From the IMG/VR virus record IMGVR_UViG_3300025162_000016, positions 1-64,000 of that record: a stretch of 64,000 nucleotides of DNA; one strand, written 5' to 3'. The notes beneath the pieces were generated by a model. The model was given only the letters and a program-made list of their open reading frames with translations, was not told the origin of the DNA and ran no database searches. Of this stretch, positions 1-52,525 are shown piece by piece. The position numbers were made by a program, and so were the translations under genes. Every line of letters starts with the position of its first letter. Positions within the stretch are counted from its first letter, which is position 1.

Positions 1-166
1 ATTCTTCACCGGAAAAATATATTAAAACAAGCGATTTATTGACAGAATTTCACTTCGGTTGCAGTTTTAATGTTGACGCAGTGGACACCACCTACTCGTC
101 AACCCACAACTGTTTATTTTATTAGAACTGAAGTTACTATAGCAGAATTTCTATAAATGTCAACAT
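1..166 (-). repeat. Inverted repeat copy 1 (may extend beyond window start); carries a leftward promoter and hairpin ncRNA candidate
   Basis: Reverse complement of 6806..6971 apart from about 3 substitutions (GATTTATT vs GATTTTTT; ACTGAAGTT vs ACTGGAATT). Confidence 0.95.
136..163 (-). promoter_or_regulatory. sigma70-type promoter pointing out of the window
   Basis: Minus strand TTGACA-N16-TATAGT with TG extended -10. Confidence 0.7.
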
Positions 167-206
167 TTTTCAATAAAATGTTTGCTCTTTTCTGATACTT
201 ATAAAC

Positions 207-707
207 ATGAAAACAAAATTTATATTTCTTATAATAAGTTTCTTACTGTTGGTAGGATGTAACACCGTTCCTAGTTTTACTTCTAATAATATTCTTAATT
301 TAAGAGTGGTAGATGCTTCTCAAAACATACTGAGAGGTGGTCAACCAGATGCGAAGGGATTTATATATTTGAAATCACTTGGTATAACTAATATTATTAA
401 ACTTAATTTAGAAGATAATGAGGATGCGGAGGCAACTGCATTAGGAATGACGGTGGTTTATATTCCTATTAACACATATGATCAGGTAATTCATTTGGAA
501 AAGTGGAAGTTCGAGGTTGCGGTAATTGCTATAACTCCGAACACTTTCATTCATTGTGCGCATGGACAAGATCGAACTGGGTTGGTTGTAGCGGGATATA
601 GGATGGCGAATGGAATGTCTAAAGCAGATGCAGAAAAAGAAATGCTGGCGAATGGATTTCACAAAGAATTGATTGGGTTATGGGGATTTTTTAAAAAAAT
701 AAATTAA
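207..707 (+). CDS. Lipoprotein, dual-specificity/tyrosine phosphatase family
   Basis: Lipobox LLVGC; catalytic loop IHCAHGQDRTG (HCxxGxDRTG). Confidence 0.8.
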   Translation: MKTKFIFLIISFLLLVGCNTVPSFTSNNILNLRVVDASQNILRGGQPDAKGFIYLKSLGITNIIKLNLEDNEDAEATALGMTVVYIPINTYDQVIHLEKWKFEVAVIAITPNTFIHCAHGQDRTGLVVAGYRMANGMSKADAEKEMLANGFHKELIGLWGFFKKIN

Positions 708-740
708 TGATTTATCTTTTTCTGTTGATATTTAAGATAT

Positions 741-2459
741 ATGACAGAAAAACAATCACTCCCATCAAGCGTTTATAATTGGAAGAGACAAAAGCCAGAT
801 TCTCGTGATTATAAATTTGCAGAAATACCTTCGGTGAAACGATTAAAAGTAACAACTCCACCACCGGTTGTTAATTTACGAAAATGGTGTTCTGAAGTAG
901 AAAATCAAAAATCTTTAGGTAGTTGTTTTACCGGCGATACTTTAATTCCTCTTTTGAATGGAAAGATAGCTACACTGAAAGAACTTACAGATGGGATGTA
1001 TGGGAAAACTTTTTGGGTATATGGAAATAAAAATGGAAGAATGGTTCCTGCGTTAGCATCCGCATCTCTTACACAGTATATCGCACCCATTTATAATGTC
1101 ACATTAGATAATGGGAGAACAATAAAATGTACTGCTGATCATCAGTTTTTGATGCGAGATGGTAATTACAAAAAAGCAATGGAATTAGTATCTGGGGATA
1201 GTTTAATGTCATTTAGAAGAAAATATAATAAATTGGGATATGAGTATGTTTTTTGCCACAGTGACCACAAATATCATCTTACACATTGGTTAGTCGGAAG
1301 TTATATACATGATTATTCTGTTAATAAAAATGGAGTAGAAGTGATACATCATAAGGATTTTATTAAAAATAATAATACTCCGGAAAATTTGGTAGGAATG
1401 ACAATACAAGAACATTCAATATATCAAAATAAAACGGCGGAATGTAAATTAAAACGTTTTATCGCAGCGAAAAATAGATGGAAAGATATAACGCCGGAAG
1501 CTATGAGTCGTGTTGTAGATTCCGCAGAAATACGTTTGGGGGCAGTGGGAACACGAAGTCAGATAGCAAAAACAGCAAACGAGGTATTTCTTAAATGTGG
1601 AAATATTTCTAAAGAACAATGGGAAACGACGGACGTAACAAAACGATTTAAGTTTGAAACGGCGATGAAATATTTTGGAAACCAAGACGAGTTATTGATT
1701 GCTGCACAAAATTATAATCATAAAGTCGTATCGGTCATTAATAGTAATACATCCGAAGATGTTTATTGTCTCACGGTACCAGATACTCAAAATTTTGCAC
1801 TTAATGATGGAGTTTATGTTCATAATTGTACCGGCCAGGCGTGGGTGGGTTTAATGGAGTGGCATGAGAATTTCATGGGAAGAGGAGGAAAGGCATTTCA
1901 AAATCTTAGTCGGTTGTTTGTTTATTATAATGAACGGGAACTTGAAGGAACCATCAATGAGGATGCCGGTGCCGAATTAAGAAGTGGAGCAAAAGCATTG
2001 GCTACGTGGGGGGTTTGTTATGAAAAAAGTTGGCCTTATAACATTGATACTTTCACACAAAAACCAAGTCCAATATGTTATCAGGATGGAGCTATTCATA
2101 AAATTAATAGTTATTATTCTATCAGTACATTTAATCATCTTAAAATGTGTTTGGCAAACAATTTGCCGGTGGTATTTGGATTTATGGTATATTCGAGTTT
2201 TGATTCCGATGTGGTTGCTAAAACCGGTATAGCTTCTATGCCAGATATTAAAAACGAGGAATTGCTGGGGGGACACGCCGCAATGATTGTGGGATATAAT
2301 AATTATGAGAAGCGATTTTTAGTAAGAAATTCGTGGGGGAAAAATTGGGGACTTAAAGGAATTAATGCCGGTTATTTTACGCTTCCCTACGATTATGTGG
2401 CTAATCCCAATCTTGCCAGTGATTTTTGGACGGTGGTTCGTATTGTCGAAGACGCATGA
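741..2459 (+). CDS. Papain-family (C1A) cysteine peptidase interrupted by an intein
   Basis: QKSLGS|CTGQAW after intein removal; GGHA (His) and VRNSWG (Asn) motifs. Confidence 0.9.
   Translation: MTEKQSLPSSVYNWKRQKPDSRDYKFAEIPSVKRLKVTTPPPVVNLRKWCSEVENQKSLGSCFTGDTLIPLLNGKIATLKELTDGMYGKTFWVYGNKNGRMVPALASASLTQYIAPIYNVTLDNGRTIKCTADHQFLMRDGNYKKAMELVSGDSLMSFRRKYNKLGYEYVFCHSDHKYHLTHWLVGSYIHDYSVNKNGVEVIHHKDFIKNNNTPENLVGMTIQEHSIYQNKTAECKLKRFIAAKNRWKDITPEAMSRVVDSAEIRLGAVGTRSQIAKTANEVFLKCGNISKEQWETTDVTKRFKFETAMKYFGNQDELLIAAQNYNHKVVSVINSNTSEDVYCLTVPDTQNFALNDGVYVHNCTGQAWVGLMEWHENFMGRGGKAFQNLSRLFVYYNERELEGTINEDAGAELRSGAKALATWGVCYEKSWPYNIDTFTQKPSPICYQDGAIHKINSYYSISTFNHLKMCLANNLPVVFGFMVYSSFDSDVVAKTGIASMPDIKNEELLGGHAAMIVGYNNYEKRFLVRNSWGKNWGLKGINAGYFTLPYDYVANPNLASDFWTVVRIVEDA
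924..1826 (+). mobile_element. Cis intein (301 aa) with HNH endonuclease
   Basis: Starts CFTGDT; block B CTADHQF; HNH motif VIHHKDFIKNNNTPENL; ends VYVHN followed by C. Confidence 0.9.
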
Positions 2460-2995
2460 AAATAGCGTTTTATAAAGGAACTAGTTGGTTTAGTAAAGCA
2501 ATCATGCGAATTTCCCGTGGGGGTTATTCTCATGCGGCGGTTCAATTAAACGACGGAACCATTGTTGAAGCGGGTGTAAAAAATGGGGTATGTCTGAGAA
2601 AAAGTTTATTGGACGACGTGGATATTAATACTACGGTCGATGTATTTGATGTTCAAACTACGCCGGAAGAAGATGAAATTATTTGTGATTTCTTGATTCG
2701 ACAAATGGGGAAGGGGTATGATTTCTGGAATATAATTGGGTTTGTATTATATTCATCTAAAGAAGGAAGAAAAGGATATGATCGGTGGTTTTGTAGTGAA
2801 TTGGTAGTGGCGGCTTTTCGACAAGCCGGAATCAATCTACTCACACGAGTTGACGCATGGAAAATATCACCCACGATTTTATCTTATAGTCCTCTCCTAA
2901 AAAGCGGACAGAGAATGCAGATTACAAAAAGTAAACGATTCGGTGGCATAAAACACTCAAATTCAATACATACGACAACTGAAAACTTAGGATAA
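2456..2995 (+). CDS. Permuted papain-like amidase (YiiX/YebB-type NlpC/P60)
   Basis: YSHAAV His precedes GYDFW and WFCSELV Cys; ATGA overlap with the upstream gene. Confidence 0.75.
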   Translation: MKIAFYKGTSWFSKAIMRISRGGYSHAAVQLNDGTIVEAGVKNGVCLRKSLLDDVDINTTVDVFDVQTTPEEDEIICDFLIRQMGKGYDFWNIIGFVLYSSKEGRKGYDRWFCSELVVAAFRQAGINLLTRVDAWKISPTILSYSPLLKSGQRMQITKSKRFGGIKHSNSIHTTTENLG

Positions 2996-3078
2996 TAGTT
3001 TATTTGCGGGCACAAGGACATCATTTTAATGGTTTTTGAATAATTTGAACTATTTATAGGATGAACTATAGATAAAAT

Positions 3079-4470
3079 ATGCATATCATTACACCGTATA
3101 ATCCGTGGGCTCCTAAAAAGAAAAAAACTTGGCAGGAAGAGTTGTGGGAACAGCAAACCATTGCGGAGGCTGAAGCAAGAATGTTAGCAGAAGCTAGTAG
3201 CAGGACATTACCCAATAATTCTCCTAATACTTCAATGGCAACGGTTGGACCAATGGCAAATACTATGGCAGGCGGTGGCGGTAAACCCGTTTATGCATTT
3301 TTTAGCGCCGGTTCAGACGTGGTAAATTTCGATCGGAGTCCTGCTAGTGGAGATGGCCCAGTCACGGTCAATTTTATAAATTTAACTACAACTCCTCAGT
3401 TCGATTCATATAAATGGAGATTTAGTGATAATACTACTAGTACGGATGTAAATCCGGTTCATATATTTCAAAGCGGAAGTACTAATTCAACCATTTATAT
3501 CGCATCGTTGGAAGTAAGTAATTCTGTAACCGGTGCGCCGGGTGGAAGAAGTCCAGATGTTTTTATTGTGGTAGGAGTTCCTAGTGTAACTGCCAGTTAT
3601 ACGTATACAACTACATCCAAGGTAGCGCCTTTCTCGGCGTCGTTTACTAATACTTCGATTAATACAAGTCAAACAAAAACGACTTCGTATGTTTGGATAA
3701 TCAAAAACGACAATAATACATACACGTCTACGGCGACCGATTTTGAGGTTAGAATTGATAGTGGAAGTGTTACCGCATCGCTCGGAATGACTGGATCGTA
3801 TGGATTAACTAGTTTGACTAATTCAATGTTTAAGGCGGCAGCACCCACATTATTAGTATCCTACACCGTGGTCACTTCGTCTAAATATGCTCCCGCTAAT
3901 GTAACGTTATCAAGTTCATATAGCTATACCGGAATCGGAACTCTTAGTGGACTCTGGCGTGAAGGAGAGTATCAGGAAAATGGCACGGAATATGTGGTTG
4001 GATATCCCGGTGCAAAAGTTATTGGGCCGGAAGTTTTCAATACGAAATCGATTTCGGGCGGTGATGGAAAATTCACCTCATCATTAGCAATTACTGAGTC
4101 TATATACGGAATTACCGCTTTCTATACTCAGAGTTTCCAGCTTAAATTGCCAACGTTGGAACTGTCATTCGTCACTCGTTCATTTGGTAACGGTGGAATA
4201 GAGAATTCTTATATGGAGCCGGTTTCAATGTCGTACACTTCGAGTATCGTTACGGAAGGTATGTATGGGGCGAATTACACATTCCTTTGGGATTTCGGTG
4301 CGGCAAGTTTCACAAACTCTCAAGGAGTTTATGCTGGGACTGCAACAACTCAAGGACCGCATTTCCGATCTGATTATGCTCCCGGTTCATACACGGCATC
4401 ACTGGAAGTTACATCGAGCATTTATGGATTGTCGGTGAGATCAACTCAAAGTTTCGTTGTCGGATCTTAA
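3079..4470 (+). CDS. PKD/Ig-like domain Ser/Thr-rich protein
   Basis: WRFSDNTTSTDVNPVHIF and FLWDFG PKD-like motifs. Confidence 0.6.
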   Translation: MHIITPYNPWAPKKKKTWQEELWEQQTIAEAEARMLAEASSRTLPNNSPNTSMATVGPMANTMAGGGGKPVYAFFSAGSDVVNFDRSPASGDGPVTVNFINLTTTPQFDSYKWRFSDNTTSTDVNPVHIFQSGSTNSTIYIASLEVSNSVTGAPGGRSPDVFIVVGVPSVTASYTYTTTSKVAPFSASFTNTSINTSQTKTTSYVWIIKNDNNTYTSTATDFEVRIDSGSVTASLGMTGSYGLTSLTNSMFKAAAPTLLVSYTVVTSSKYAPANVTLSSSYSYTGIGTLSGLWREGEYQENGTEYVVGYPGAKVIGPEVFNTKSISGGDGKFTSSLAITESIYGITAFYTQSFQLKLPTLELSFVTRSFGNGGIENSYMEPVSMSYTSSIVTEGMYGANYTFLWDFGAASFTNSQGVYAGTATTQGPHFRSDYAPGSYTASLEVTSSIYGLSVRSTQSFVVGS

Positions 4471-4499
4471 TTTAAACACTCATTATAAAATCAAAGACA

Positions 4500-4531
4500 A
4501 GGCGTTAGTAAAATAACGCCTTTTCTTTTTT
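4500..4531 (+). terminator. Rho-independent terminator
   Basis: AGGCGTTA/TAACGCCT stem followed by a T tract. Confidence 0.7.
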
Positions 4532-4552
4532 GTAACATAATCGTAACATAGA
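4531..4552 (+). promoter_or_regulatory. Pho-box-like direct repeat
   Basis: GTAACAT at 4532 and 4543 (11-bp period) upstream of the porin-pstS pair. Confidence 0.55.
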
Positions 4553-4601
4553 TTCATCAATTTCGTTTGCGGTTCTTCATAGTTATTTGCAAATTAAAAT
4601 T

Positions 4602-5288
4602 ATGATGAAAAATCTAAAAGTATATGTTTATGTCGCCGCCCTGATCATGGTCGGTGTTTTTAATGTTAATGCTCAAACTAATGTTGTATCAACGGGTTCC
4701 ACAAATAAACCTGTACATAAAACATTTAAAACCTTTGATTTGAGTAATTTCGTCTTTACAGTTGAAAACGAGTTCCGTGCTAAAGACACGGGCACCTCCT
4801 TCTTCTATGAACATAATGATATTCAAGCTAAATATCTTTTGATAGACAAATATTTTGATATCTTCACTGATTATCGACTTATTTTTAAAAACAGTGCCGA
4901 AGGTAATAATTGGAAAAATCAAAGTATGTTTCTTGAAGGCTTTAATATAAAATATCCCGAACAAACGTGGGGTAAAATTAACCTCCGTCAACGACTTGAA
5001 ATTGGACTGAACCATGCTCCTACAAAAGACACTTATCAGTGGAATGTGTTTCCCAAATATAATACCCCATGGAAACTTACTAAATATGAAATCAATCCAT
5101 TCGTAGCCGATGAATCCTTCTTTGACACCCAGCAATCTATGGGCTTTGTAAAAAATCGAGTCTATGCTGGTATAGATTATAAGTTTACTCCCAAAATCAA
5201 AGGTGGTACTTGGTACTACTATGAAACCGCTGCTCATTCATCATCAACCGCAAATGTCCTCGTTACCCAGATTAAATTCGAATTTTAA
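4602..5288 (+). CDS. Outer-membrane beta-barrel protein, DUF2490-like
   Basis: Signal peptide; RQRLE and NRVYAG motifs; C-terminal Phe (QIKFEF). Confidence 0.6.
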   Translation: MMKNLKVYVYVAALIMVGVFNVNAQTNVVSTGSTNKPVHKTFKTFDLSNFVFTVENEFRAKDTGTSFFYEHNDIQAKYLLIDKYFDIFTDYRLIFKNSAEGNNWKNQSMFLEGFNIKYPEQTWGKINLRQRLEIGLNHAPTKDTYQWNVFPKYNTPWKLTKYEINPFVADESFFDTQQSMGFVKNRVYAGIDYKFTPKIKGGTWYYYETAAHSSSTANVLVTQIKFEF

Positions 5289-5294
5289 ATTAAT

Positions 5295-6170
5295 ATGAAA
5301 TATCTTTTTATAAGTGCTATTCTCAGTCTGTTAATGGTAGGTTGTAATAAATCTAATAACATCGTGACAACCCCAACCACTACCATCCAAGTAAAAGGCT
5401 CAGATACAATGGTTAATCTGGCTCAAGCATGGGCAGAAGAATATGTAAAAACAAATCCTGCCATCAATGTGGAGGTTTGTGGCGGCGGGTCTGGTGTTGG
5501 TATTGCTGCCCTCGAAAAGGGAATCATTGATATAGCGAATAGTAGCCGTAATATGAAACCCGACGAAATTGATGCTACTAAAAAAATAACAGGTAAGTTA
5601 CCAGTGGAGTTCGTAGTCGGTTATGACGCTCTTGGTGTATATGTTCATATTGATAATCCCATTAATGAAATTACCATCGAACAACTCGCCCAAATCTATG
5701 TGGCAAATGGTAAAATTAATAAATGGTCGGATATTGGTATCAAAATTCCCAATGGAGAAGATAACATTGTCCTCGTCAATAGACAATCTAGTTCGGGAAC
5801 ATATGAGTTCTTCAGAGAACATGTTCTAAACAAAAAAGACTTCCGCCTCGGTTCGAGGGATATGAATGGTTCAAAAGAAGTGGTTGAATTAGTTTCATTT
5901 ACAAAAGCCGCTATCGGCTATAGTGGTATGGGGTATAATATACCGGGAAAAGTAAAAATGTTGAAAATAGCTAAAGCTGCCGGTATCCCATCCGTCGAAC
6001 CTACAATGATAAATGCATTAAATAAATCATACCCTCTATCTCGTTCACTATTATGTTATACTCTAGGAGAACCCGCTGGTGAACTGAAAAAATATCTTGA
6101 TTGGTGCGTATCTCCTCCCGGTCAAAAAATAGTAGAACAAACGGGATATGTTCCACTCCCAATTAAATGA
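5295..6170 (+). CDS. pstS: Phosphate ABC transporter substrate-binding lipoprotein
   Basis: KGSDTM, GGGSGVG, DIANSSR, RQSSSGTYEFF, YPLSR motifs; lipobox MVGC. Confidence 0.95.
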   Translation: MKYLFISAILSLLMVGCNKSNNIVTTPTTTIQVKGSDTMVNLAQAWAEEYVKTNPAINVEVCGGGSGVGIAALEKGIIDIANSSRNMKPDEIDATKKITGKLPVEFVVGYDALGVYVHIDNPINEITIEQLAQIYVANGKINKWSDIGIKIPNGEDNIVLVNRQSSSGTYEFFREHVLNKKDFRLGSRDMNGSKEVVELVSFTKAAIGYSGMGYNIPGKVKMLKIAKAAGIPSVEPTMINALNKSYPLSRSLLCYTLGEPAGELKKYLDWCVSPPGQKIVEQTGYVPLPIK

Positions 6171-6204
6171 GCGGCAATTATCATTTTGTTTCTATTTATT
6201 TTGA

Positions 6205-6410
6205 AGGAAGCAGAAAACCCATCTGCTTCCAGCGGATGGGATGAATGCGACCCATTGAAAAATAGTTTGATGTTTCTCATTTCTCAAAAATATATATTCT
6301 TGTAGAAAGCAATCTTCGGATTAGCATTCTCAAGGGCTGGAAGAGTCCTATAGAAACTCTAATGTTAGAGACAAGTGGAAACCCACTTGCTTTAGCGGGT
6401 GGGTACTTCA
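6205..6410 (+). mobile_element. Non-autonomous IS200/IS605 mini-element (left-end and right-end hairpins, no ORF)
   Basis: Left-end hairpin CCCATCTGCT/AGCGGATGGG plus ATGAAT (6218-6246); right-end hairpin ACCCACTTGCT/AGCGGGTGGGT plus ACTTCA (6381-6410); same layout as the two tnpB element ends; left boundary approximate. Confidence 0.65.
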
Positions 6411-6415
6411 TAAAT

Positions 6416-6790
6416 ATGATTAAACTAAAAGATATTTTGTTTGAGCTTATTGATAAGAATGCGATATTATATTTAGGATGGGTTAAACGCAATAACCATG
6501 ATGTTATGGGAATGGACATTCAGTCTGGGGAGGATGAGACGCATCATAATTATATGCTCGGATTGCCTCCGGAATGGAGAAATGAATTTGATAGTAATTT
6601 ATTGAGATGGAGATATCGAAAAGATATTAATATTGTCTATTGGTGGGAGTTTGGTAATCCAACCGATGACGAGAAAGAGGCGGTAGAACACTGGATTGAA
6701 AAAAAATTAAATCAAAAAAATCCTTCTCATAAAATTATTCCTACCGATAAAAATAATATGACTTTTTGGAAATCTCATGGAGAAGATTAA
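6416..6790 (+). CDS. Hypothetical protein with MIKLKDILFE N-terminal tag
   Basis: True start reassigned to ATG 6416; the upstream ORF extension lies within the mini-element. Confidence 0.7.
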   Translation: MIKLKDILFELIDKNAILYLGWVKRNNHDVMGMDIQSGEDETHHNYMLGLPPEWRNEFDSNLLRWRYRKDINIVYWWEFGNPTDDEKEAVEHWIEKKLNQKNPSHKIIPTDKNNMTFWKSHGED

Positions 6791-6808
6791 CAATGTCAAA
6801 TTTTGATG

Positions 6809-6836
6809 TTGACATTTATAGAAATTCTGCTATAGT
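6809..6836 (+). promoter_or_regulatory. sigma70-type promoter
   Basis: TTGACA(6809)-N16-TATAGT(6831) with TG extended -10. Confidence 0.7.
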
Positions 6837-6842
6837 AATTCC

Positions 6843-6971
6843 AGTTCTAATAAAATAAACAGTTGTGGGTTGACGAGTAGGTGGTGTCCACTGCGTCAAC
6901 ATTAAAACTGCAACCGAAGTGAAATTCTGTCAAAAAATCGCTTGTTTTAATATATTTTTCCGGTGAAGAAT
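6843..6971 (+). ncRNA. Candidate small structured RNA within the inverted repeat
   Basis: Follows the promoter; stem CAGTT..GTTGACG-AGT-GG[TGGTGT]CC-ACT-CGTCAAC..AACTG; no ORF; present in two copies. Confidence 0.4.
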
Positions 6972-7143
6972 ATTAATAAACATAGGTTAATTGACTAACA
7001 AAAAGATGAGAATAGAAATATTCCAGCACGGAGTTTATAGTCCCGAGTGTTTTAAAAACCTAAATTTAGCGAGAATAAATTTCAATAGAACAGGTAACTA
7101 TCTGTGGGTCAATATAGTGTTGACCATAAACAAAAAAAAATAT

Positions 7144-7422
7144 ATGAAAATTCAATCAATCATTTTAGCAGTTTTATTATCTACTAGCACTTTTGCTTTC
7201 GCACAAGATACACCTCAACCTCGCCGACAGGGACCGCCTCCCACCGTTCAATGTGAGGGAATGAAAAACTTAATGAAAGCAATGCAAGATCATAGAAAAA
7301 CATGTGAAGTCTGCAAGACCAATCCTCCTCCGAGAGGAATGTTTGGTCCACGAATGGGCGGTAAACAGGGTCAGGGTCAAGGTAGAGGTCAGGGTAGAGG
7401 TCCGCAGGGTCCGCCTTCTTGA
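7144..7422 (+). CDS. Small secreted protein, Gly/Gln/Pro-rich tail, CxxC
   Basis: Signal peptide MKIQSIILAVLLSTSTFAFA; the start could lie upstream (7006). Confidence 0.55.
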   Translation: MKIQSIILAVLLSTSTFAFAQDTPQPRRQGPPPTVQCEGMKNLMKAMQDHRKTCEVCKTNPPPRGMFGPRMGGKQGQGQGRGQGRGPQGPPS

Positions 7423-7499: not shown

Positions 7500-8709
7500 A
7501 AGAAATCCCTTTCCTTTAGGTGAGGGATGAATTTCGGAATATAATTAATAATTTTTTGATGTTTCGTATTTCTCAATCATATGTATAAGTAGAAAATGAA
7601 ATTTACTTATAAATATAGAATGTTTCCGACAAAAACCCAACAATCCATTCTAAATGGACAGTTGGAAACTTGTAGATTTCTTTATAATCATTTACTTGAA
7701 ATTAGGAAAAATGCATGGGAAAAAGAAAAAAAATCAATGTCCTGTTATGATACCCAAAATCTAATTCCTAAATTAAAAGAAGAATTTCCTCAACTCAAAT
7801 CTGTTTATTCACAAGTTCTCCAAAACGTAAATGTAAGAATTGATTTAGCATATCAAGGATTTTTTAGAAGATTGAAAAGTAATGAAAAATCTGGATATCC
7901 ACGCTTTAAAGGAAAAGGTAGATATAAATCCATTTGTTATTCACAATATGGAAATGGTTGTAAATTAGAAAAAAATAAATTATCTATTTCTAAAGTAGGA
8001 GATGTTTTCATTAAATTGCATAGACCAATTGAAGGTACACCGAAAACAGTTACTATAATAAAACAACCGACAGGTAAATGGTTCGTTTGTATTTCTTGTC
8101 AAGATGTTTCCAAAAAAATAAAGAATTTTCCCAAAACAAATAAAGAGTGTGGAATTGATGTTGGAATAACTTCGTTTGCTACTTTTGATAATGGTAATAA
8201 AATTGAAAATCCTCATTTTTTTGAAACCGAGGAAAAACAGTTATCAAAAGCACAAAATAAGGAAAAGTGGAAAGCGGTAAAAAGAATACATGAGAGGATT
8301 GGAAATAAGAGACATGAATTTCTTCATAAAATAACGAATGATATTCTTAAACAATATGATTTCATATCTATCGAAGATATTGATGTAAATTCTATTATAA
8401 GAAAAAGATGGAATAAGAAGCGGGTATATGATGTAGCGTGGAGTAATTTTGCAAACATACTTTCTCATAAAGCTGAAAATGCTGATAAGATTGTAGTAAA
8501 AATAAATCCGGCATATACTAGTCAGACATGTAGTGATTGCGGAACGAGAACAGTTATGGAAGAAAAGGATAGAATTTATAATTGTTCTTGTTGTGGGATG
8601 GTAAAAGATAGGGACGTGAATGCTGCAATAAACATTTTGAGATTGGGAACACAATCTCACGTTATTATATAACGAAGAAGCCCCTGCCTTTAGGCAGGGG
8701 AGTGTTCAC
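7500..8709 (+). mobile_element. IS200/IS605-family tnpB-only element
   Basis: Left-end hairpin ATCCCT..AGGGAT plus GAATT near 7505; right-end hairpin CCCCTGCCT/AGGCAGGGG (8681-8700) ending TTCAC at 8709. Confidence 0.8.
7596..8672 (+). CDS. tnpB: RNA-guided endonuclease TnpB (IS605 OrfB type)
   Basis: YKYRMFPT HTH; RuvC GIDVG, IEDI, DRDVNAA; CSDC/CSCC zinc finger. Confidence 0.92.
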   Translation: MKFTYKYRMFPTKTQQSILNGQLETCRFLYNHLLEIRKNAWEKEKKSMSCYDTQNLIPKLKEEFPQLKSVYSQVLQNVNVRIDLAYQGFFRRLKSNEKSGYPRFKGKGRYKSICYSQYGNGCKLEKNKLSISKVGDVFIKLHRPIEGTPKTVTIIKQPTGKWFVCISCQDVSKKIKNFPKTNKECGIDVGITSFATFDNGNKIENPHFFETEEKQLSKAQNKEKWKAVKRIHERIGNKRHEFLHKITNDILKQYDFISIEDIDVNSIIRKRWNKKRVYDVAWSNFANILSHKAENADKIVVKINPAYTSQTCSDCGTRTVMEEKDRIYNCSCCGMVKDRDVNAAINILRLGTQSHVII

Positions 8710-8724
8710 ATGCTATATATCATT

Positions 8725-9150
8725 ATGAAAAAGATATTCCATATACTTCTAGTCAGTTTAACCGTGTTTATATTAGCCGGTTGCACCACTGCTTTACAGT
8801 CAGATAAAATAATATCAATTAAAACTCGTTGTTTTGGGGTTATAATTGAAACCTCATCGATGTCTGCCAACAGTGTTCCAACAGTAAAGCTTGGATTCAT
8901 AAGTCAAGTAGTTCAATTAATTCCTACATCTACGAATGTTTTATATGCTCCAAATTATATGGACACTTTCGATCTAGGTCAGGGTATGAGTCCATTTAGC
9001 ACTACTATATCCGAAGATACCGGGACCGGTAATGTAATGTTAGATCCAGGTACCGCCACCATAATTACTACTAATAAAATGGGATTAGCTACCACTAATC
9101 ACGCTCCTTATAAATTAGGAGCAAGACTTCGCTCGCCTAAGCTGTTATAG
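8725..9150 (+). CDS. Lipoprotein of unknown function
   Basis: MKKIFHILLVSLTVFILAGC lipobox; stop codon lies inside the terminal CRISPR repeat. Confidence 0.65.
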   Translation: MKKIFHILLVSLTVFILAGCTTALQSDKIISIKTRCFGVIIETSSMSANSVPTVKLGFISQVVQLIPTSTNVLYAPNYMDTFDLGQGMSPFSTTISEDTGTGNVMLDPGTATIITTNKMGLATTNHAPYKLGARLRSPKLL

Positions 9151-9612
9151 TAACTGGTCTGTTCCAGCACTTCACCTACTGGTGCGGCGGTTGGGCATGC
9201 CGACAACAAGCGGAGGTGATATAGTAACTGGTCTGTTCCAGCACTTCACCCAAAGCAAGATTTTTATTCGCTAAAGAACAGTGTGGAGGTGATATAGTAA
9301 CTGGTCTGTTCCAGCACTTCACCCTAATATGGGCGGTCCCGCTGGGGTATCCTATGGGGTGATATAGTAACTGGTCTGTTCCAGCACTTCACCCTAATTG
9401 CATTTCCTTTTTCTCGGTATCGAACCTACGGTGATATAGTAACTGGTCTGTTCCAGCACTTCACCCATCTATGAAAGAACGCATAGTAATGAAGTTAGCG
9501 AAAGGTGATATAGTAACTGGTCTGTTCCAGCACTTCACCACGGCGTGCGCCATTTAAGGAATCCCTTAGTTTCGCCGGTGATATAGTAACTGGTCTGTTC
9601 CAGCACTTCACC
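9141..9612 (-). CRISPR. CRISPR array: 7 repeats of 36 bp, 6 spacers of 34-38 bp; no cas gene in window
   Basis: Repeat (minus strand) GGTGAAGTGCTGGAACAGACCAGTTACTATATCACC at 9141 (2 mismatches), 9215, 9288, 9358, 9430, 9504, 9577; spacers 38, 37, 34, 36, 38, 37 bp; degenerate repeat at left and promoter at right give minus orientation. Confidence 0.97.
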
Positions 9613-11010: not shown

Positions 11011-11079
11011 ATTAAACATTTTAAGAGAAATATAGAAAAATATTGTAATTTGCGGAAAGTTGGTTATATTTATAACCAT

Positions 11080-11649
11080 ATGAAACTATCGAAATGGGCA
11101 AAATTGCAAGGAATAAGTTACAGAACAGCATGGTCTTGGTTTAAGAATAACACATTGCCTATTAAATCTTATCAAACTCCAACTGGAACTATTATAGTAG
11201 ATGACTCGTTGGATGTCAAAGAAAATAATAATGAAGTTGATATTTACTGTAGAGTTAGTTCCTCTAATAAAAAATTGGACTTAGACAATCAACTTAAATT
11301 ATGTGAAGAATATTGTATTTCTAATGGATACAAAATTAGAAAATCACTAAAAGAAATTGCATCGGGAATGAATGATAATCGACCAAGATTGAATTTAATT
11401 TTGGACAATCCATCAAATAAATTAGTAGTCCTTTATAAAGACAGATTAACAAGATTTGGATTTAATTATATAGAAAAACTATTAAAATCAAAAAAGTGTG
11501 AGTTGATAGTAATAAATCAAAACAAAACTGAGGAAGAGGACTTATTAAAAGACTTCATTGCTATTATTACATCGTTCTGTTGTAGAATGTATGGTGCGAG
11601 AAGAGGACAATCAAAAGCATTACGTATGAAACAGGAATTGAAAACATGA
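11080..11649 (+). CDS. tnpA: IS607 transposase (MerR-like HTH plus serine recombinase)
   Basis: MKLSKWAK..GISYRTAW HTH; YCRVSS; KDRLTRFGF. Confidence 0.93.
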   Translation: MKLSKWAKLQGISYRTAWSWFKNNTLPIKSYQTPTGTIIVDDSLDVKENNNEVDIYCRVSSSNKKLDLDNQLKLCEEYCISNGYKIRKSLKEIASGMNDNRPRLNLILDNPSNKLVVLYKDRLTRFGFNYIEKLLKSKKCELIVINQNKTEEEDLLKDFIAIITSFCCRMYGARRGQSKALRMKQELKT

Positions 11650-12890
11650 TTAGGAGTTCCAAACATTCTACAAAATTTACAAATCTTCGGAAAATGAAGA
11701 CATTGGCGTTGTTTATCTCGGAATATAGAAAAATAGGACAAGAAATTGTTGACATAATATGGAATAATGGATATGAAGAATTTAATATTCAGGAGGATAA
11801 ACTAAATTGTCCGAAATATCTCGATTATAAAAAATTCAACATAAATACATCCTTATCGGCTCGGGCATTAAGTTCTTTGGTTACACAGATATGTTTTAGT
11901 TTATCATCGGCAACAAAAAAACGAAAACAAATATTATATGCAAAGAATAAATTAATATCTGAAGGAAAGCCGCTTGGTAGAATTGATAAGATTCTCGATA
12001 AATATAAATTAATTAAACCAAATTTTTCAAACATCAATCCAGAATTGAGTTCAAAATGTTGCGATATTAAGGATGGAAATTCTTTTAATTATTTTTTAAG
12101 AATAAAATCAATAGGAAAAATATACGGATGTATTAAAATACCTATAAAAAATACAAAAGTATCATTAAAATGGTTAAAAAATGGAAAATTATTAAATTCA
12201 TTTTCTATTGGTCAGCAATATATTTCCCTACGATTTAATATTACAAATAAAAATGTAAATGTTGGAACTAAAATAATTGGAATTGATCAAGGACTGAAAG
12301 ATGTCGCAACATTATCAGACCATCAAATAACACCAAAATATGATATTCACGGGCATTCACTTGAATCAATTATAAATACGATATCAAAGAAGAAACGAGG
12401 TTCAGATGCATTTATTAAATCGCAGGAACATAGAAAAAATTTTATTAATTGGGCAATTAACCAATTAAATTTTAATGACGCCAAAGAAATTCGATTGGAA
12501 AAAATATGGAATATAGGATATAAACGGCGTACATCAAGAAGACTTTCACACTGGACGAATACGTTGATACGAGATAAGATTAAACGGAAATGCGAAGAGC
12601 TGGAGGTTCCAGTTATCGAGCAAGATTCCTCTTATCGCTCTCAACGATGTTCTTGTTGCGGATTAGTACGAAAGGCCAATAGAAATGGTAAAATATATAA
12701 ATGTAAAACTTGTAAATTTGAATCAGATGCTGATTATAATGCAAGTTTAAATCATATTGTAGATTTACCCGAAATCAGTTGGCAGTTTCGCAATCAACGA
12801 AATAATCTAAAATGTGGTTTTTACTGGAAGCCAAGTGGATTATTTAGTATTGATGGAGTGGAGCTTAGAGTCCCACTTTCTACCGATTAA
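11646..12890 (+). CDS. tnpB: IS607-associated TnpB nuclease, RuvC triad intact
   Basis: IGIDQG, IRLEKI, DADYNAS; CSCC/CKTC zinc finger. Confidence 0.88.
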   Translation: MIRSSKHSTKFTNLRKMKTLALFISEYRKIGQEIVDIIWNNGYEEFNIQEDKLNCPKYLDYKKFNINTSLSARALSSLVTQICFSLSSATKKRKQILYAKNKLISEGKPLGRIDKILDKYKLIKPNFSNINPELSSKCCDIKDGNSFNYFLRIKSIGKIYGCIKIPIKNTKVSLKWLKNGKLLNSFSIGQQYISLRFNITNKNVNVGTKIIGIDQGLKDVATLSDHQITPKYDIHGHSLESIINTISKKKRGSDAFIKSQEHRKNFINWAINQLNFNDAKEIRLEKIWNIGYKRRTSRRLSHWTNTLIRDKIKRKCEELEVPVIEQDSSYRSQRCSCCGLVRKANRNGKIYKCKTCKFESDADYNASLNHIVDLPEISWQFRNQRNNLKCGFYWKPSGLFSIDGVELRVPLSTD

Positions 12891-12986
12891 GATAATTTTC
12901 TATATTTTATCTAACTCTATTAAACAATGAATAAACTAACAGAAAAATCATGATATTAACAATAGTTAGACACCAACTATACACAT

Positions 12987-13022
12987 GGTGAAGTGCTGGA
13001 ACAGACCAGTCACTATATCACC
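12987..13022 (+). CRISPR. Solitary CRISPR repeat, inverted relative to the array
   Basis: GGTGAAGTGCTGGAACAGACCAGTCACTATATCACC; 35/36 identical to the array repeat. Confidence 0.95.
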
Positions 13023-13291: not shown

Positions 13292-13370
13292 GCGAACGTG
13301 GTACAGTGGCCGACTACGCCTTCTCTACACGGAGGAATCATCGCAGGTTCGAATCCTGCCGTTCGCACCA
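13292..13370 (+). tRNA. tRNA-Val(UAC) with atypical C33 and 7-nt variable region
   Basis: Acceptor GCGAACG/CGTTCGC-A-CCA; anticodon stem CCTTC/GGAGG, loop TCTACAC; T arm GCAGG-TTCGAAT-CCTGC. Confidence 0.8.
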
Positions 13371-13380
13371 GCTTAGTTGT

Positions 13381-13454
13381 CGGTTATAGGTGTTGCGGAA
13401 GCATACAAGTTTTGGGAACTTGTGGGGAGCGTTCAACTCGCTCATAGCCGACCA
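13381..13454 (+). tRNA. tRNA-Pro(UGG)
   Basis: CGGTTAT/ATAGCCG-A-CCA; CAAGT-TTTGGGA-ACTTG; GAGCG-TTCAACT-CGCTC. Confidence 0.9.
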
Positions 13455-13464
13455 AATTTTTGAT

Positions 13465-13535
13465 ATAGTTATCTTATAACGGTAATACGCTAGTTTTGCA
13501 GACTAGAAATCGGGGTTCGGCTCCACGGAATTTAA
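13465..13535 (+). pseudogene. Degenerate tRNA (anticodon TGC, Ala-like)
   Basis: Intact anticodon arm CTAGT-TTTGCAG-ACTAG and GGTTCG T loop, but no acceptor stem or CCA. Confidence 0.5.
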
Positions 13536-13537
13536 AT

Positions 13538-13609
13538 TGCAGTAAGGTGTAAGAGTGCATGTGACTCTCATAAGGTCACGGGCCGGTGCGAATCCGGAAT
13601 CTGCATCCA
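13538..13609 (+). tRNA. tRNA with CAU anticodon (Met or Ile2), partly mismatched stems
   Basis: TGACT-CTCATAA-GGTCA arm; TGCAG/CTGCA acceptor with 2 inner mismatches; T loop TGCGAAT; CCA end. Confidence 0.6.
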
Positions 13610-14215: not shown

Positions 14216-14250
14216 ACCCCCGATCCGTCAAAAAGATCGGGGAGTTTTCA
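14216..14250 (+). terminator. Terminator-like hairpin
   Basis: CCCCGATC/GATCGGGG stem followed by T-rich sequence; boundaries approximate. Confidence 0.55.
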
Positions 14251-51303: not shown

Positions 51304-52525
51304 AAACTCCCCTACCCTAAAGGGATAGGGGCTTCTATGCTGTTCACAGCAAGAGATTGTCTTCCCAATCTCAAAATGTTTCTTGCCGCATTTATGTCTC
51401 TATCCATAGATAGACCACACGAACAATTGAAAACTCGATCTTTCAACTCCATTATCGTTCTCGTTCCACATTGGCTGCAAGTTTGACTAGTATAGGCAGG
51501 GTTGATTTTTATCAATATCTTATCAGCATATGCTGCTTTATAAGATATTATGTTTCCAAACATACTCCACGCTACATCATTTATCTGTTTACTACACCAT
51601 CTTTTCTTTAACAATTTATTTGTTTCAATATCTTCTATAAATATAAAATCATATCTGTTTAATATACCATTTGTTGTTTTGTGAAGAAAATCATTTCTCT
51701 TATTTACAATTCTCTCATGAATTCTTCTAGCAACTTTCCATTTTTTCTGTCTCTGTTTTTTTGCTAATTGCTTTTGCTCTTTCTCAAAAAATCGTGGATT
51801 GTTTATTTTAGTTCCATCATCAAAAGTGGCAAAAGATAGAATCCCAACATCTATTCCAGTTTCTTTACCTGTTCTTCTAAATTGTTTTTTATTATTTGGA
51901 ATATCGCAACAAGATATAGAAACGAACCATTTATTTGTTGGGGTTTTGGCTATGGTTATAGTTTTTGGAGTTCCAAATAATTTTCTATGTAATACAATAT
52001 CAACTTCTCCTACTTTTGATAATAATAATTTATTTTCTTTTATTTCGCACCCATTATTATATTGCGGGTAACAAATAGAAAAATATCTACCTTTTCCACG
52101 AAATCTAGGATATCCCGGAGTATCTCCATTTTTCAATCTTCTAAAAAATCCTTGGTATGCTAAATCAACTCTTATTGCTACATTTTGTAAACATTGAGAA
52201 TATACAGAAGTTAGTTGGGGATATGTTTCTTTTAAAATTGGTATTTGTTTGATTGAATCATAACAAGACACAGACTTCTTTTCTTTTTCCCAACTATTCT
52301 TTCTAATTTCAAGTAAATGATTATAGAGAAACCTACAAGTTTCCAACTGGTTATTCAGGATTGTCTCCTGTTTCTTTGTTGGATATATTCTGTATTTATA
52401 TGTAAGTTTCATTTTCTACATATATGTATATCAAAGAATGTGAAAACGTTGATTTATTTTGAATTATTTTTCTCTTGGTCGAATTCATCCCCAAGGCTAA
52501 AGCCGTTGGGGTTTTCTTCTCCCAA
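51300..52525 (-). mobile_element. IS200/IS605-family tnpB-only element
   Basis: Left-end hairpin 52489-52511 plus ATGAATT; right-end hairpin CCCCTATCCCT/AGGGTAGGGG ending TTCAC at 51300. Confidence 0.8.
51312..52412 (-). CDS. tnpB: RNA-guided endonuclease TnpB, close paralogue of 7596..8672
   Basis: GIDVG, FIEDI, DRDINAA; CSQC/CSC zinc finger. Confidence 0.92.
   Translation of the reverse strand: MKLTYKYRIYPTKKQETILNNQLETCRFLYNHLLEIRKNSWEKEKKSVSCYDSIKQIPILKETYPQLTSVYSQCLQNVAIRVDLAYQGFFRRLKNGDTPGYPRFRGKGRYFSICYPQYNNGCEIKENKLLLSKVGEVDIVLHRKLFGTPKTITIAKTPTNKWFVSISCCDIPNNKKQFRRTGKETGIDVGILSFATFDDGTKINNPRFFEKEQKQLAKKQRQKKWKVARRIHERIVNKRNDFLHKTTNGILNRYDFIFIEDIETNKLLKKRWCSKQINDVAWSMFGNIISYKAAYADKILIKINPAYTSQTCSQCGTRTIMELKDRVFNCSCGLSMDRDINAARNILRLGRQSLAVNSIEAPIPLG

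What the first reader, a model, noticed from the sequence alone, without database searches (positions are those of the whole stretch)
1..6971. 166-bp inverted repeat carrying a promoter and hairpin RNA brackets a 6.6-kb accessory cassette
Seen: 1..166 and 6806..6971 are near-identical inverted copies. Each has TTGACA-N16-TATAGT followed by an ORF-free segment that folds into a long hairpin (GTTGACG-AGT-GG[TGGTGT]CC-ACT-CGTCAAC), and the two promoters fire outward. Inference: either a duplicated small regulatory RNA, or recombination arms that invert or exchange the phosphatase/protease/PstS cassette.
Basis: partly seen in the sequence, partly recalled or inferred. Interest (0 to 1): 0.6.

Follow-up and report, generated by a model that had tools for sequence, protein, structure and literature searches.

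The report
Repeated promoter-RNA module from a transposon end
The two inverted arms are two of at least five copies of a ~300-bp non-coding module in a 362-kb CRISPR-bearing phage, made of a promoter, a structured RNA and the relic right end of an IS607/TnpB insertion sequence, and exchange between copies inverts the cassette in some wild variants.

Summary
The repeat unit is 297-330 bp, not 166. The genome holds three full and two partial copies, and related strains hold more. The record's 7.1-kb 'terminal repeat' (1-7102) is an assembly overshoot bounded by these repeats.

The promoter (TTGACA-N16-TATAGT) and the hairpin survive in copies diverged by 13-20%. The promoter spacer varies, and six stem pairs show compensatory changes. 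Many G-U pairs place the fold on the promoter's strand. No ORF is conserved.

The last ~85 nt are a relic of an IS607-type tnpB 3' end:
- its last 12 codons;
- a hairpin shared by the 3' ends of all four IS607-type tnpB genes here, where TnpB guide RNAs (ωRNAs) are usually encoded;
- the insertion-sequence terminus ...GTAACTAT, where all nine copies stop, next to nine different flanks.

I read it as an ORF-less IS607/TnpB right-end derivative with its own promoter, that is, a PATE-like orphan ωRNA module.

Contigs from other metagenomes show both junctions of the inverted cassette (about 10% of spanning contigs) and c2 x c3 exchanges. The arms therefore do recombine. The inversion looks like a by-product rather than a switch. 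Reads could not be examined.

The parts
1..198 (-). Copy c1, cut by the window and contig start. It holds the 33-nt proximal extension and the 166-nt core. Its distal 131 nt lie at genome 361526-361656.
136..163 (-). c1 promoter TTGACA-16-TATAGT, firing leftward out of the window
   Evidence: The -35 and -10 boxes are kept and the spacer varies in L017, L038 and c4p.
72..103 (-). c1 hairpin H1
207..6790 (+). Cassette. It encodes a DSP/Tyr-phosphatase lipoprotein (207-707), a papain C1 protease split by an intein with HNH (741-2459), a C92 amidase (2456-2995), a PKD-domain protein (3079-4470), DUF2490 (4602-5288), a PstS-like binding protein (5295-6170) and an unknown ORF (6362-6790).
6194..6411 (+). 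Solo relic of another (T2-type) tnpB 3' end, ...GGAAACCCACTTGCTTTAGCGGGTGGGTACTTCAT. In strain L025 it sits elsewhere.
6806..7102 (+). Copy c2, full length apart from the 33-nt proximal extension
6809..6836 (+). c2 promoter TTGACA-16-TATAGT, firing rightward
6869..6900 (+). c2 hairpin H1. One compensatory and three G-U changes keep it paired in L038.
6930..7015 (+). Central long stem (H2) and small GNRA-type hairpin (H3), with four compensatory pairs
7016..7102 (+). IS607/tnpB right-end relic. Positions 7016-7063 read KYSSTEFIVPSVLKT*, which resembles a TnpB C-terminus. It also holds the hairpin GGAG(Y)TTATAGTCCC and the terminus ...GGTAACTAT at 7102.
7144..7422 (+). First gene downstream of c2. 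It encodes a 92-aa protein with a signal peptide. Gene callers extend it to 138 aa from 7006, inside the element.
7596..8672 (+). tnpB (T1 subfamily)
11027..12919 (+). IS607-type unit. It holds a serine-recombinase tnpA (11080-11649) and a tnpB (11646-12890) of the subfamily whose 3' end resembles the element. It is absent from strain L024.

Best explanation
The arms are copies of a dispersed, non-coding module of 300-330 bp.

Shown:
- Each copy carries a sigma70-type promoter of the kind this phage uses in its intergenic regions.
- The ~265 nt downstream form a conserved multi-hairpin fold on the promoter's strand.
- The last ~85 nt are homologous to the right end of IS607-family insertion sequences in the same genome (serine-recombinase tnpA plus tnpB).
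- Every copy ends at the insertion-sequence terminus and is followed by unrelated DNA.
- Copy number and position differ between strains that are 98-99% identical.
- Contigs from other samples contain exchanges between copies, including both junctions of an inverted 6.6-kb cassette.

Inferred:
- The module is an ORF-less IS607/TnpB right-end derivative that acquired its own promoter and a new 5' RNA domain. It would be a PATE-like 'orphan ωRNA' gene.
- Its RNA is most likely bound in trans by one of the phage's IS607-type TnpB proteins, with the 3' flank in the guide position.
- It also acts as a portable outward promoter and leader for whatever lies downstream: small genes, solitary CRISPR repeats, or tRNAs in a relative.
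- Inversion of the cassette is a by-product of recombination between inverted copies, not a switch.
For: Copies and boundaries. Nine contexts all end at ...GGTAACTAT.

Promoter:
- Best match in the region.
- 24 of 56 near-consensus sites in the genome lie in the 8% that is non-coding.
- The -35 and -10 boxes are kept while the spacer changes in L017, L038 and c4p.

RNA fold:
- Folding z-score -3.3.
- 68 pairs are 99.3% paired, with six compensatory pairs against 0-2 in slid controls.
- 44 of 450 pair cells are G-U, which would be C-A mismatches on the other strand.
- The small ORF is broken in c1, L017, L038 and L041.

IS607 link:
- nhmmer hit at 77889-77969, E 0.0024.
- A covariance model built only from element copies hits the tnpB 3' end at 77869-77969 (29.8 bits, E 0.002). 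It also hits 182279-182370 weakly, E 3.1.
- Both hits end at the model's last position. 77969 is the IS terminus by its 24/28 terminal inverted repeat, and 182370 by the break in strain L025.
- The hairpin GGAGCTTAnAGTCCC, with covarying flanking pairs, is shared by all four tnpB genes of this subfamily.
- The coding relic KYSSTEFIVPSVLKT* resembles ...VVSKEPIVPSVRKTRVLS*.
- tnpA-S and tnpB identities.

Polymorphism and recombination:
- An extra copy at 14247/14248 in strains L024-L026.
- L017 has the element where L038 lacks it, with an exact junction.
- Inverted left junction in L045, found in two samples plus one similar place.
- Reciprocal junction in two contigs.
- c3 x c2 exchanges in L049 and L044.
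- Mosaic SNP haplotypes among copies.

ORF-less IS derivatives that encode ωRNAs used in trans are described for IS200/IS605 (PMC10055086).
Against:
- Only ~85 nt are IS-derived. This is shorter than characterised ωRNA scaffolds, and identity to the nearest tnpB 3' end is only ~60%, so TnpB binding is not assured.
- No cognate tnpB lies beside any copy.
- The 5' boundary shows no insertion-sequence left end and no common adjacent motif.
- The 3' flanks have no second match that would mark a target.
- No Rfam family matches, including the RAGATH motifs.
- The recombinant junctions come from short-read assemblies. Chimeric joins across a 300-bp repeat cannot be excluded, and two of the contigs have no DNA on hand.
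Confidence: 0.6

Rival explanations
1. Portable promoter/leader cassette only, like the PeSLs of T4-type phages. The module exists to start early transcription. Its structured leader acts in cis on RNA stability, processing or antitermination for the downstream unit. The IS607 relic is an incidental fossil, and copies spread and reshuffle by homologous recombination.
For: - It has a sigma70-type promoter with an AT-rich upstream block and lies in intergenic, hyperplastic regions.
- In six of nine contexts a co-oriented unit follows. These are the 92-aa gene after c2, the solitary repeat plus gene after c4p and c5p, the 103-aa gene in L017, the tRNA-Val/Pro/Leu cluster in L038, and a tnpB-fragment ωRNA relic in L024.
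- Indels between close strains sit at its borders.
- PeSL definition: PMC2839356.
Against: - c1 and c3 face the 3' ends of convergent genes, so they drive nothing.
- The strongest conservation (95-100% in copies that are 80% identical overall) is in the IS-derived distal 95 nt, not at the promoter.
- The razor-sharp common 3' end at an IS terminus is not expected from plain homologous recombination.
- PeSL stem-loops are short terminators at the promoter, whereas this hairpin has no U-tract.
Confidence: 0.25
2. Dedicated invertible segment. An IS607 serine recombinase acts on the two inverted IS termini (361526 and 7102), as Gin or Hin act on their sites, and flips the cassette as a programmed switch.
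For: - Three serine-recombinase tnpA genes are in the genome.
- In L045 and L049 the whole SNP haplotype of one partner is joined to the other partner's distal flank. The exchange therefore lies in the last ~67 nt or at the terminus itself.
- Both orientations are seen.
Against: - L044 exchanged internally, between offsets 128 and 166.
- The last 67 nt are also the longest identical stretch, so homologous recombination explains the exchange points equally well.
- No recombinase gene is adjacent.
- Exchange also occurs with c3.
- Inversion changes neither the outward transcripts nor, predictably, expression of the cassette.
- Only ~10% of spanning contigs are inverted.
Confidence: 0.08
3. CRISPR accessory RNA: a leader or tracrRNA for the phage's Cas12j-like system.
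For: - c4p and c5p abut a perfect solitary CRISPR repeat 2 nt after the element's end.
- The element's tail, GAACAGGTAACTAT, resembles the repeat's GAACAGACCAGTTACTAT.
Against: - All four real arrays use a different conserved leader.
- The RNA's complementarity to the repeat is no better than to shuffled repeats, z -0.8.
- Cas12j effectors need no tracrRNA (general knowledge).
- Three full copies have no repeat nearby.
Confidence: 0.04
4. Assembly artefact: the repeat or its inverted arrangement does not exist in the phage.
For: - The record's 7.1-kb terminal repeat is assembler-made.
- Many assemblies break at the element.
Against: More than 30 contigs from JGI and ENA assemblies, made with different assemblers, span c1 or c2 with both flanks. 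Diverged copies also exist in other phages.
Confidence: 0.03

Closest known systems
TnpB guide RNAs (ωRNA/reRNA) of IS200/IS605-IS607 elements, and ORF-less derivatives (PATEs) that encode them
   Same: - The 3' domain is homologous to the 3' ends of IS607-type tnpB genes in the same genome.
- It ends exactly at the IS right terminus.
- The DNA beyond differs in every copy, which is the guide position.
- The RNA is structured and no ORF is conserved.
- Candidate trans partners are present: 15 tnpB genes.
   Different: - It has its own strong sigma70 promoter.
- A 170-nt 5' domain is unrelated to tnpB.
- Only ~85 nt are IS-derived.
- There is no recognisable left end or target-adjacent motif.
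- It lives in a huge phage.
- It does not match RAGATH-18, the IS607 guide-RNA motif described in PMC11061315.
PeSL promoter/stem-loop cassettes of T4-type phages (PMC2839356, PMC4122927)
   Same: - A sigma70-like early promoter with an AT-rich upstream block.
- Repeated in intergenic, plastic regions.
- Recombination between copies produces indels and shuffling between close strains.
   Different: - PeSLs are short, number ~50 per genome, and their stem-loop is a terminator at the promoter.
- This module is 300-330 bp with five copies.
- It has a long transcribed fold supported by covariation, and an IS terminus.
Invertible segments of phages (Mu G/Gin, P1 C/Cin) and composite transposons flanked by inverted IS copies
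   Same: - Cargo lies between inverted repeats.
- Both orientations occur in nature.
- Serine recombinases are encoded in the genome.
   Different: - The repeats are 300 bp and have other copies elsewhere.
- No dedicated invertase or enhancer is adjacent.
- The cargo is metabolic or secreted-enzyme genes, not alternative tail fibres.
- No expression switch is predicted.
- Both outer ends are right ends, which is not a substrate expected for IS607 excision.

Membership tests
TnpB ωRNA / IS607 right end | Sequence and structure homology to the 3' region of a bona fide tnpB gene | tested here: met
   - nhmmer E 0.0024.
- Covariance model built from element copies only: 29.8 bits, E 0.002, full-length and ending at the same base.
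- Shared hairpin with covarying pairs in four tnpB 3' ends.
- C-terminal coding relic.
TnpB ωRNA / IS607 right end | Ends at the transposon right terminus, followed by locus-specific DNA | tested here: met
   Nine copies end at ...GGTAACTAT with nine different flanks. The homologous position in IS76k is its terminus, shown by its terminal inverted repeat. In IS180k it is the terminus by the strain break in L025.
TnpB ωRNA / IS607 right end | Encoded in or just after its own tnpB gene | tested here: not met
   No tnpB lies upstream of any copy. The 5' 215 nt show no tnpB homology.
TnpB ωRNA / IS607 right end | RNA binds TnpB and guides DNA cleavage next to a target-adjacent motif | not testable with these tools
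   Needs co-expression, pull-down and a motif-library assay.
TnpB ωRNA / IS607 right end | Match to a curated ωRNA family such as RAGATH-18 | tested here: not met
   Rfam scans at gathering and E-value thresholds gave no relevant hit.
Non-autonomous IS (MITE/PATE) | Both transposon ends present | tested here: inconclusive
   - The right end is present.
- The 5' border (GTAT...) shows no left-end homology.
- A 20/23 inverted match between the -10/TSS region and the terminus is at noise level, and only AGTTCTA is kept in L017 and L038.
PeSL | Sigma70-like promoter with an AT-rich upstream region in intergenic, plastic DNA | tested here: met
PeSL | Stem-loop at or overlapping the promoter that acts as a terminator | tested here: not met
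   The hairpin starts ~26 nt after the likely start site, has no U-tract on the transcribed strand, and was not reported by the terminator scan.
PeSL | Recombination between copies creates indels or rearrangements between close relatives | tested here: met
Gin/Hin-type invertible segment | Short inverted crossover sites with an adjacent invertase | tested here: not met
   The arms are 297-330 bp. The nearest serine recombinase is the IS607 tnpA at 11080-11649.
Gin/Hin-type invertible segment | Both orientations present in the population | tested here: inconclusive
   Both junction types occur in contigs from about four samples, against ~31 canonical spanning contigs. No reads were available.
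CRISPR tracrRNA / leader | Anti-repeat complementarity, or position directly upstream of the arrays | tested here: not met
   Duplex energy against the repeat is no better than against shuffled repeats. The arrays have another leader.

The most novel reading that the evidence does not exclude
The cassette is an RNA-guided homing unit. Two outward-facing orphan ωRNA genes would flank the cargo, each carrying the neighbouring phage DNA in the guide position. During co-infection an IS607-type TnpB would then cut genomes that lack the unit, and repair from the carrier would copy the whole metabolic-gene cassette across. This would be a TnpB-based gene drive for cargo among huge phages. More broadly, this phage may run promoter-equipped ωRNA modules and solitary CRISPR repeats as a shared RNA toolkit.
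Probability: 0.1. Interest if true: 0.85.

Novelty: new variant of a known kind. Interest (0 to 1): 0.62.

Why it matters
TnpB nucleases and their guide RNAs are the ancestors of Cas12 and are treated mainly as bacterial transposon parts. Four things make this case useful:
- A huge phage with its own Cas12j-like CRISPR system also carries 15 tnpB genes and three IS607 units.
- It carries a conserved, promoter-driven RNA module built on an IS607 right end, which is multiplied and kept under selection.
- If TnpB uses the RNA in trans, it would be a natural example of a guide RNA uncoupled from its nuclease gene in a virus, with its own promoter.
- The module is a concrete recombination substrate that reshuffles accessory genes, through inversions and insertions between strains 98-99% identical, much as PeSLs do in T4-type phages.

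There is also a practical point. The 'direct terminal repeat' annotation of this IMG/VR record, and contig breaks in many lake metagenomes, are caused by this repeat.

Tried and rejected
- Rfam: nothing for the element or for the IS607 3' ends.
- GenBank phages: no DNA match to the element and no protein match to the Cas12-like effector.
- IMG/VR pattern scans found only fragments of the same phage.
- The search for related loci with the neighbouring AAA protein found no relative.
- Bacterial genomes: no exact match to the element's conserved block or to the CRISPR repeat.
- tracrRNA idea rejected.
- Coding idea rejected. The ORF MRIEIFQHG... is frameshifted or stopped in four copies. It was still a useful handle, because a called 71-aa 'protein' led to the strain variants.
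- Guide-target search: the 3' flanks of six copies have no second site in the genome. The exception is a 23/26 match between the c1 flank and IS607 tnpA codons at 11175-11200, which I read as an adjacent tnpA relic.
- Left-end or terminal-inverted-repeat search for the element: inconclusive.
- Real terminal redundancy for 1-7102 rejected on boundary logic and on other assemblies, though it was not tested by read depth.
- The genome search could not open the ENA record behind L038, and one script call was lost.


Full report
**Where the window lies.** The window is bases 1-64000 of a 368,758-bp IMG/VR virus record (Ga0209083_1000006, about 34% G+C) flagged as having direct terminal repeats. Bases 1-7102 are identical to 361657-368758, so the unique genome is 361,656 bp.

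**The observation.** Arms 1-166 and 6806-6971 are inverted copies with 163/166 matches. Each carries TTGACA-16-TATAGT with an extended TG. This is the best sigma70-type match in the first 9.9 kb, and the two promoters point outward. The description is therefore correct, but the window edge cuts it short.

**True extent and copy number.** I call the direction of the promoter 'F'.
- Homology continues 131 nt beyond the 166 on the distal side, and 33 nt on the proximal side in most copies.
- Three full copies exist: c1 (361526-361854, equal to window 1-198, minus strand), c2 (6806-7102, plus strand) and c3 (237040-237371, minus strand).
- c4p (330239-330451, plus strand) has lost ~150 internal nt, including the hairpin.
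- c5p (350397-350537, plus strand) keeps only the distal 141 nt.
- An HMM search and a covariance-model search found no further full copy.

**The 'terminal repeat' is an assembly product.**
- The contig starts at the first base of a 171-nt stretch identical in c1 and c3.
- It ends at the last base of a 123-nt stretch identical in c2 and c3.
- Another assembly (Ga0212088_10000258) starts at the very same base.
- Sample 3300009502 yields the phage in pieces that begin or end inside c1, c2 and c3.
- At least ten contigs of ~7.0 kb consist of the cassette plus its two arms alone.

**Diverged copies and what they show.** A metagenome scan and look-ups through neighbouring or spurious ORFs brought in related copies:
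- L017/L039, 87% identical;
- L041, 82%, partial;
- L038:393-711, 80%, on a 97-kb contig of a more distant relative;
- 98-99% strain variants L024-L026.

The alignment gives four results.
- *Promoter.* The -35 TTGACA and the -10 TATnnT are kept while the 16-nt spacer changes. Genome-wide, 24 of 56 near-consensus sigma70 sites fall in the 8% that is non-coding, mostly just upstream of plus-strand genes at 250-336 kb. This is therefore the phage's usual promoter type.
- *RNA fold.* RNAalifold predicts 68 pairs in 11 helices, and 99.3% of cells are paired. Six pairs show compensatory changes, against 0-2 when partners are slid. Covariation is above all 500 shuffles. In L038 the hairpin H1 keeps pairing through one U-A to C-G change and three changes to G-U. 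In all, 44 of 450 cells are G-U, which would be C-A mismatches on the other strand, so the fold belongs to the promoter's strand. The power is limited, because the seven sequences amount to about three independent lineages and the structure was derived from them.
- *No coding.* The ORF MRIEIFQHG... is frameshifted or stopped in c1, L017, L038 and L041.
- *Conservation.* The distal ~95 nt are 95-100% identical even in L038, and every copy stops at ...GGTAACTAT. The nine flanks that follow are unrelated.

**Origin of the distal domain.**
- The HMM of the element hit 77889-77969 (E 0.0024). This is the 3' end of a 404-aa tnpB plus 23 nt, and the match ends at ...GTAACTAT.
- A covariance model built only from element copies hit the same place full-length (29.8 bits, E 0.002). 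It also hit the 3' end of a second tnpB weakly, ending at 182370.
- 77969 is the terminus of that insertion sequence, shown by its 24/28 terminal inverted repeat with 76100-76127.
- 182370 is where a strain variant's homology breaks.
- The genome has 15 tnpB genes in four subfamilies. The subfamily concerned has four members: 76732-77946, 11646-12890, 181044-182345 and 353001-354251.
- Three of these four are preceded by a serine-recombinase tnpA, which is the IS607 arrangement.
- All four share the hairpin GGAGCTTAnAGTCCC, with covarying closing pairs, at their 3' ends.
- In the matching frame the element reads KYSSTEFIVPSVLKT*, against the TnpB C-terminus ...VVSKEPIVPSVRKTRVLS*.
- Upstream of about 7016 there is no tnpB homology.

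The module is thus a fusion of a promoter and a 170-nt RNA domain of unknown origin with the last ~85 nt of an IS607-type element. The fusion multiplied afterwards, always keeping the IS terminus as its end. ORF-less IS derivatives that encode ωRNAs for use in trans are known as PATEs in IS200/IS605 (PMC10055086). One IS607 guide-RNA class is the RAGATH-18 motif (PMC11061315), and neither the element nor the local IS607 ends match it.

**What lies downstream of each copy.**
- c2 is followed after 42 nt by a 92-aa secreted protein, then a tnpB.
- c4p and c5p are followed after 2 nt by a perfect solitary CRISPR repeat, and 8 or 3 nt later by an ATG.
- In L017 a 103-aa gene follows.
- In L038 the cluster tRNA-Val/Pro/Leu follows. 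Our genome has a solitary CRISPR repeat at that place.
- In L024-L026 the 3' third of another tnpB follows, together with its own guide-RNA region.
- c1 and c3 face the ends of convergent genes.

The module can therefore serve as a portable promoter and leader, but two full copies drive no gene. This argues that the RNA, or the DNA end, is itself the selected part.

**Recombination.**
- Strains 98-99% identical carry an extra copy at our coordinate 14247/14248.
- L017 has the element where L038 does not, with an exact junction.
- SNP haplotypes are mosaic: the c1 core equals the c3 core, and the c2 distal part equals the c3 distal part.
- *Left junction.* Look-ups of the 157-aa neighbour gave ~21 contigs with the orientation seen here. 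They also gave L045 (5.1 kb, two samples plus one similar place), in which the c1 outer flank runs through an element into the c2 inner flank, that is ORF142 reversed.
- *Right junction.* About 10 contigs are canonical. In two contigs from other samples (ERZ1426628 and ERZ1426631) a minus-strand gene starts 241 nt upstream of the 138-aa ORF and tnpB, which is exactly the spacing expected for the reciprocal junction. In the first it is the full phosphatase by Pfam. In the second it is a cut 104-aa product, assigned by the spacing alone. No DNA was available for either contig.
- L049 (4 kb) and L044 (1 kb) join the c3 inner flank to the c2 outer flank.
- In L045 and L049 the exchange lies in the last ~67 nt or at the terminus. 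In L044 it lies between offsets 128 and 166.

These are short-read assemblies and chimeras are possible. Even so, both reciprocal junctions recur in separate samples. I put the chance that the inverted form is real at about 0.75.

Whether exchange happens within the arms or at their outer ends, the outward promoters stay outward. Nothing suggests that cassette expression depends on orientation. I therefore read the inversion as a by-product of dispersed inverted repeats in a recombination-prone phage.

**The cassette.** It encodes a DSP/Tyr-phosphatase lipoprotein, a papain-like protease interrupted by an intein with HNH, a C92 amidase, a PKD-domain protein, DUF2490, a PstS-like binding protein and an unknown ORF. 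It also holds a solo relic of another tnpB 3' end at 6194-6411, which sits elsewhere in strain L025. G+C is slightly raised, 0.38-0.39 against ~0.34. In the L038 relative, a tRNA like the one at 360.65 kb here lies ~3 kb from phoH, against ~18 kb here. The whole stretch from the cassette to array 1 is therefore plastic.

**Alternatives tested.**
- tracrRNA or leader: the four arrays share a different leader, and the RNA pairs with the repeat no better than with shuffled repeats. The effector is Cas12j-like.
- PeSL: the promoter and the recombination role fit, but the terminator stem-loop and the size do not.
- Artefact: rejected for the repeat itself.

**Verdict.** The best description is a promoter-equipped, ORF-less derivative of an IS607/TnpB right end that makes a conserved structured RNA and acts as a dispersed recombination substrate. 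Transcription, TnpB binding and guide use are inferred, not shown.

Noticed in passing
window 9141-9612 (minus strand); genome 297365-298344 (minus strand), 331573-332059, 333064-333910: Four CRISPR arrays with a 36-nt repeat, GGTGAAGTGCTGGAACAGACCAGTTACTATATCACC, and 36 spacers, none matching the phage itself. They share a conserved leader with a TTGACA-17-TACACT promoter. The degenerate repeat at the far end of each array sets the direction of transcription.
   Followed up: partly
genome 300917-303928 (plus strand) and 298524-300800 (minus strand); loci L007:6918-9929 and L007:4525-6801: A 1003-aa RuvC/TNB protein lies divergently beside a Cas3 HD-helicase and an array. Its best solved relatives are Cas12j19 and Cas12X (E 3e-7). 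It has no Pfam hit and no match in GenBank phages. A Cas12j-like effector next to Cas3 is an unusual pairing.
   Followed up: partly
window 12987-13022; genome 229885, 279857, 282075, 282812, 304154-314804 (10 sites), 330454, 350540: About 16 solitary copies of the CRISPR repeat lie in sense orientation between plus-strand genes. Several end 3-40 nt before a start codon, and one lies upstream of the tRNA cluster. The variants AGTGA...TCACT and GGTGA...TCACC differ by a compensatory change of the terminal pair. They may be RNA-processing or regulatory sites for the Cas12j-like enzyme.
   Followed up: partly
whole genome; in the window 7596-8672, 11646-12890, 51312-52412 (minus strand): The genome has 15 tnpB genes in four subfamilies, three IS607 units with a serine-recombinase tnpA (76100-77969, ~11027-12919, ~180.5-182.37 kb) and one Y1 tnpA (321910-322194, minus strand). 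Positions differ between strains 98-99% identical, so these insertion sequences are active in a phage lineage.
   Followed up: partly
genome 361500-361525 (the c1 outer flank) and window 11175-11200: A 23/26 match links the DNA next to c1's terminus to IS607 tnpA codons (TPTGTII). This looks like a tnpA relic abutting c1.
   Followed up: partly
window 741-2459: A papain-family protease gene is interrupted by an intein that carries an HNH endonuclease.
   Followed up: no
window 13292-13609: A cluster of tRNA-Val(tac), tRNA-Pro(tgg) and tRNA-Met. In the relative L038 the equivalent Val/Pro/Leu cluster lies directly downstream of an element copy.
   Followed up: partly
window 1-7102 and genome 361657-368758: The 'direct terminal repeat' that makes IMG/VR class the record as complete is an assembler overshoot that ends at repeat edges. 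The unique length is 361,656 bp.
   Followed up: yes
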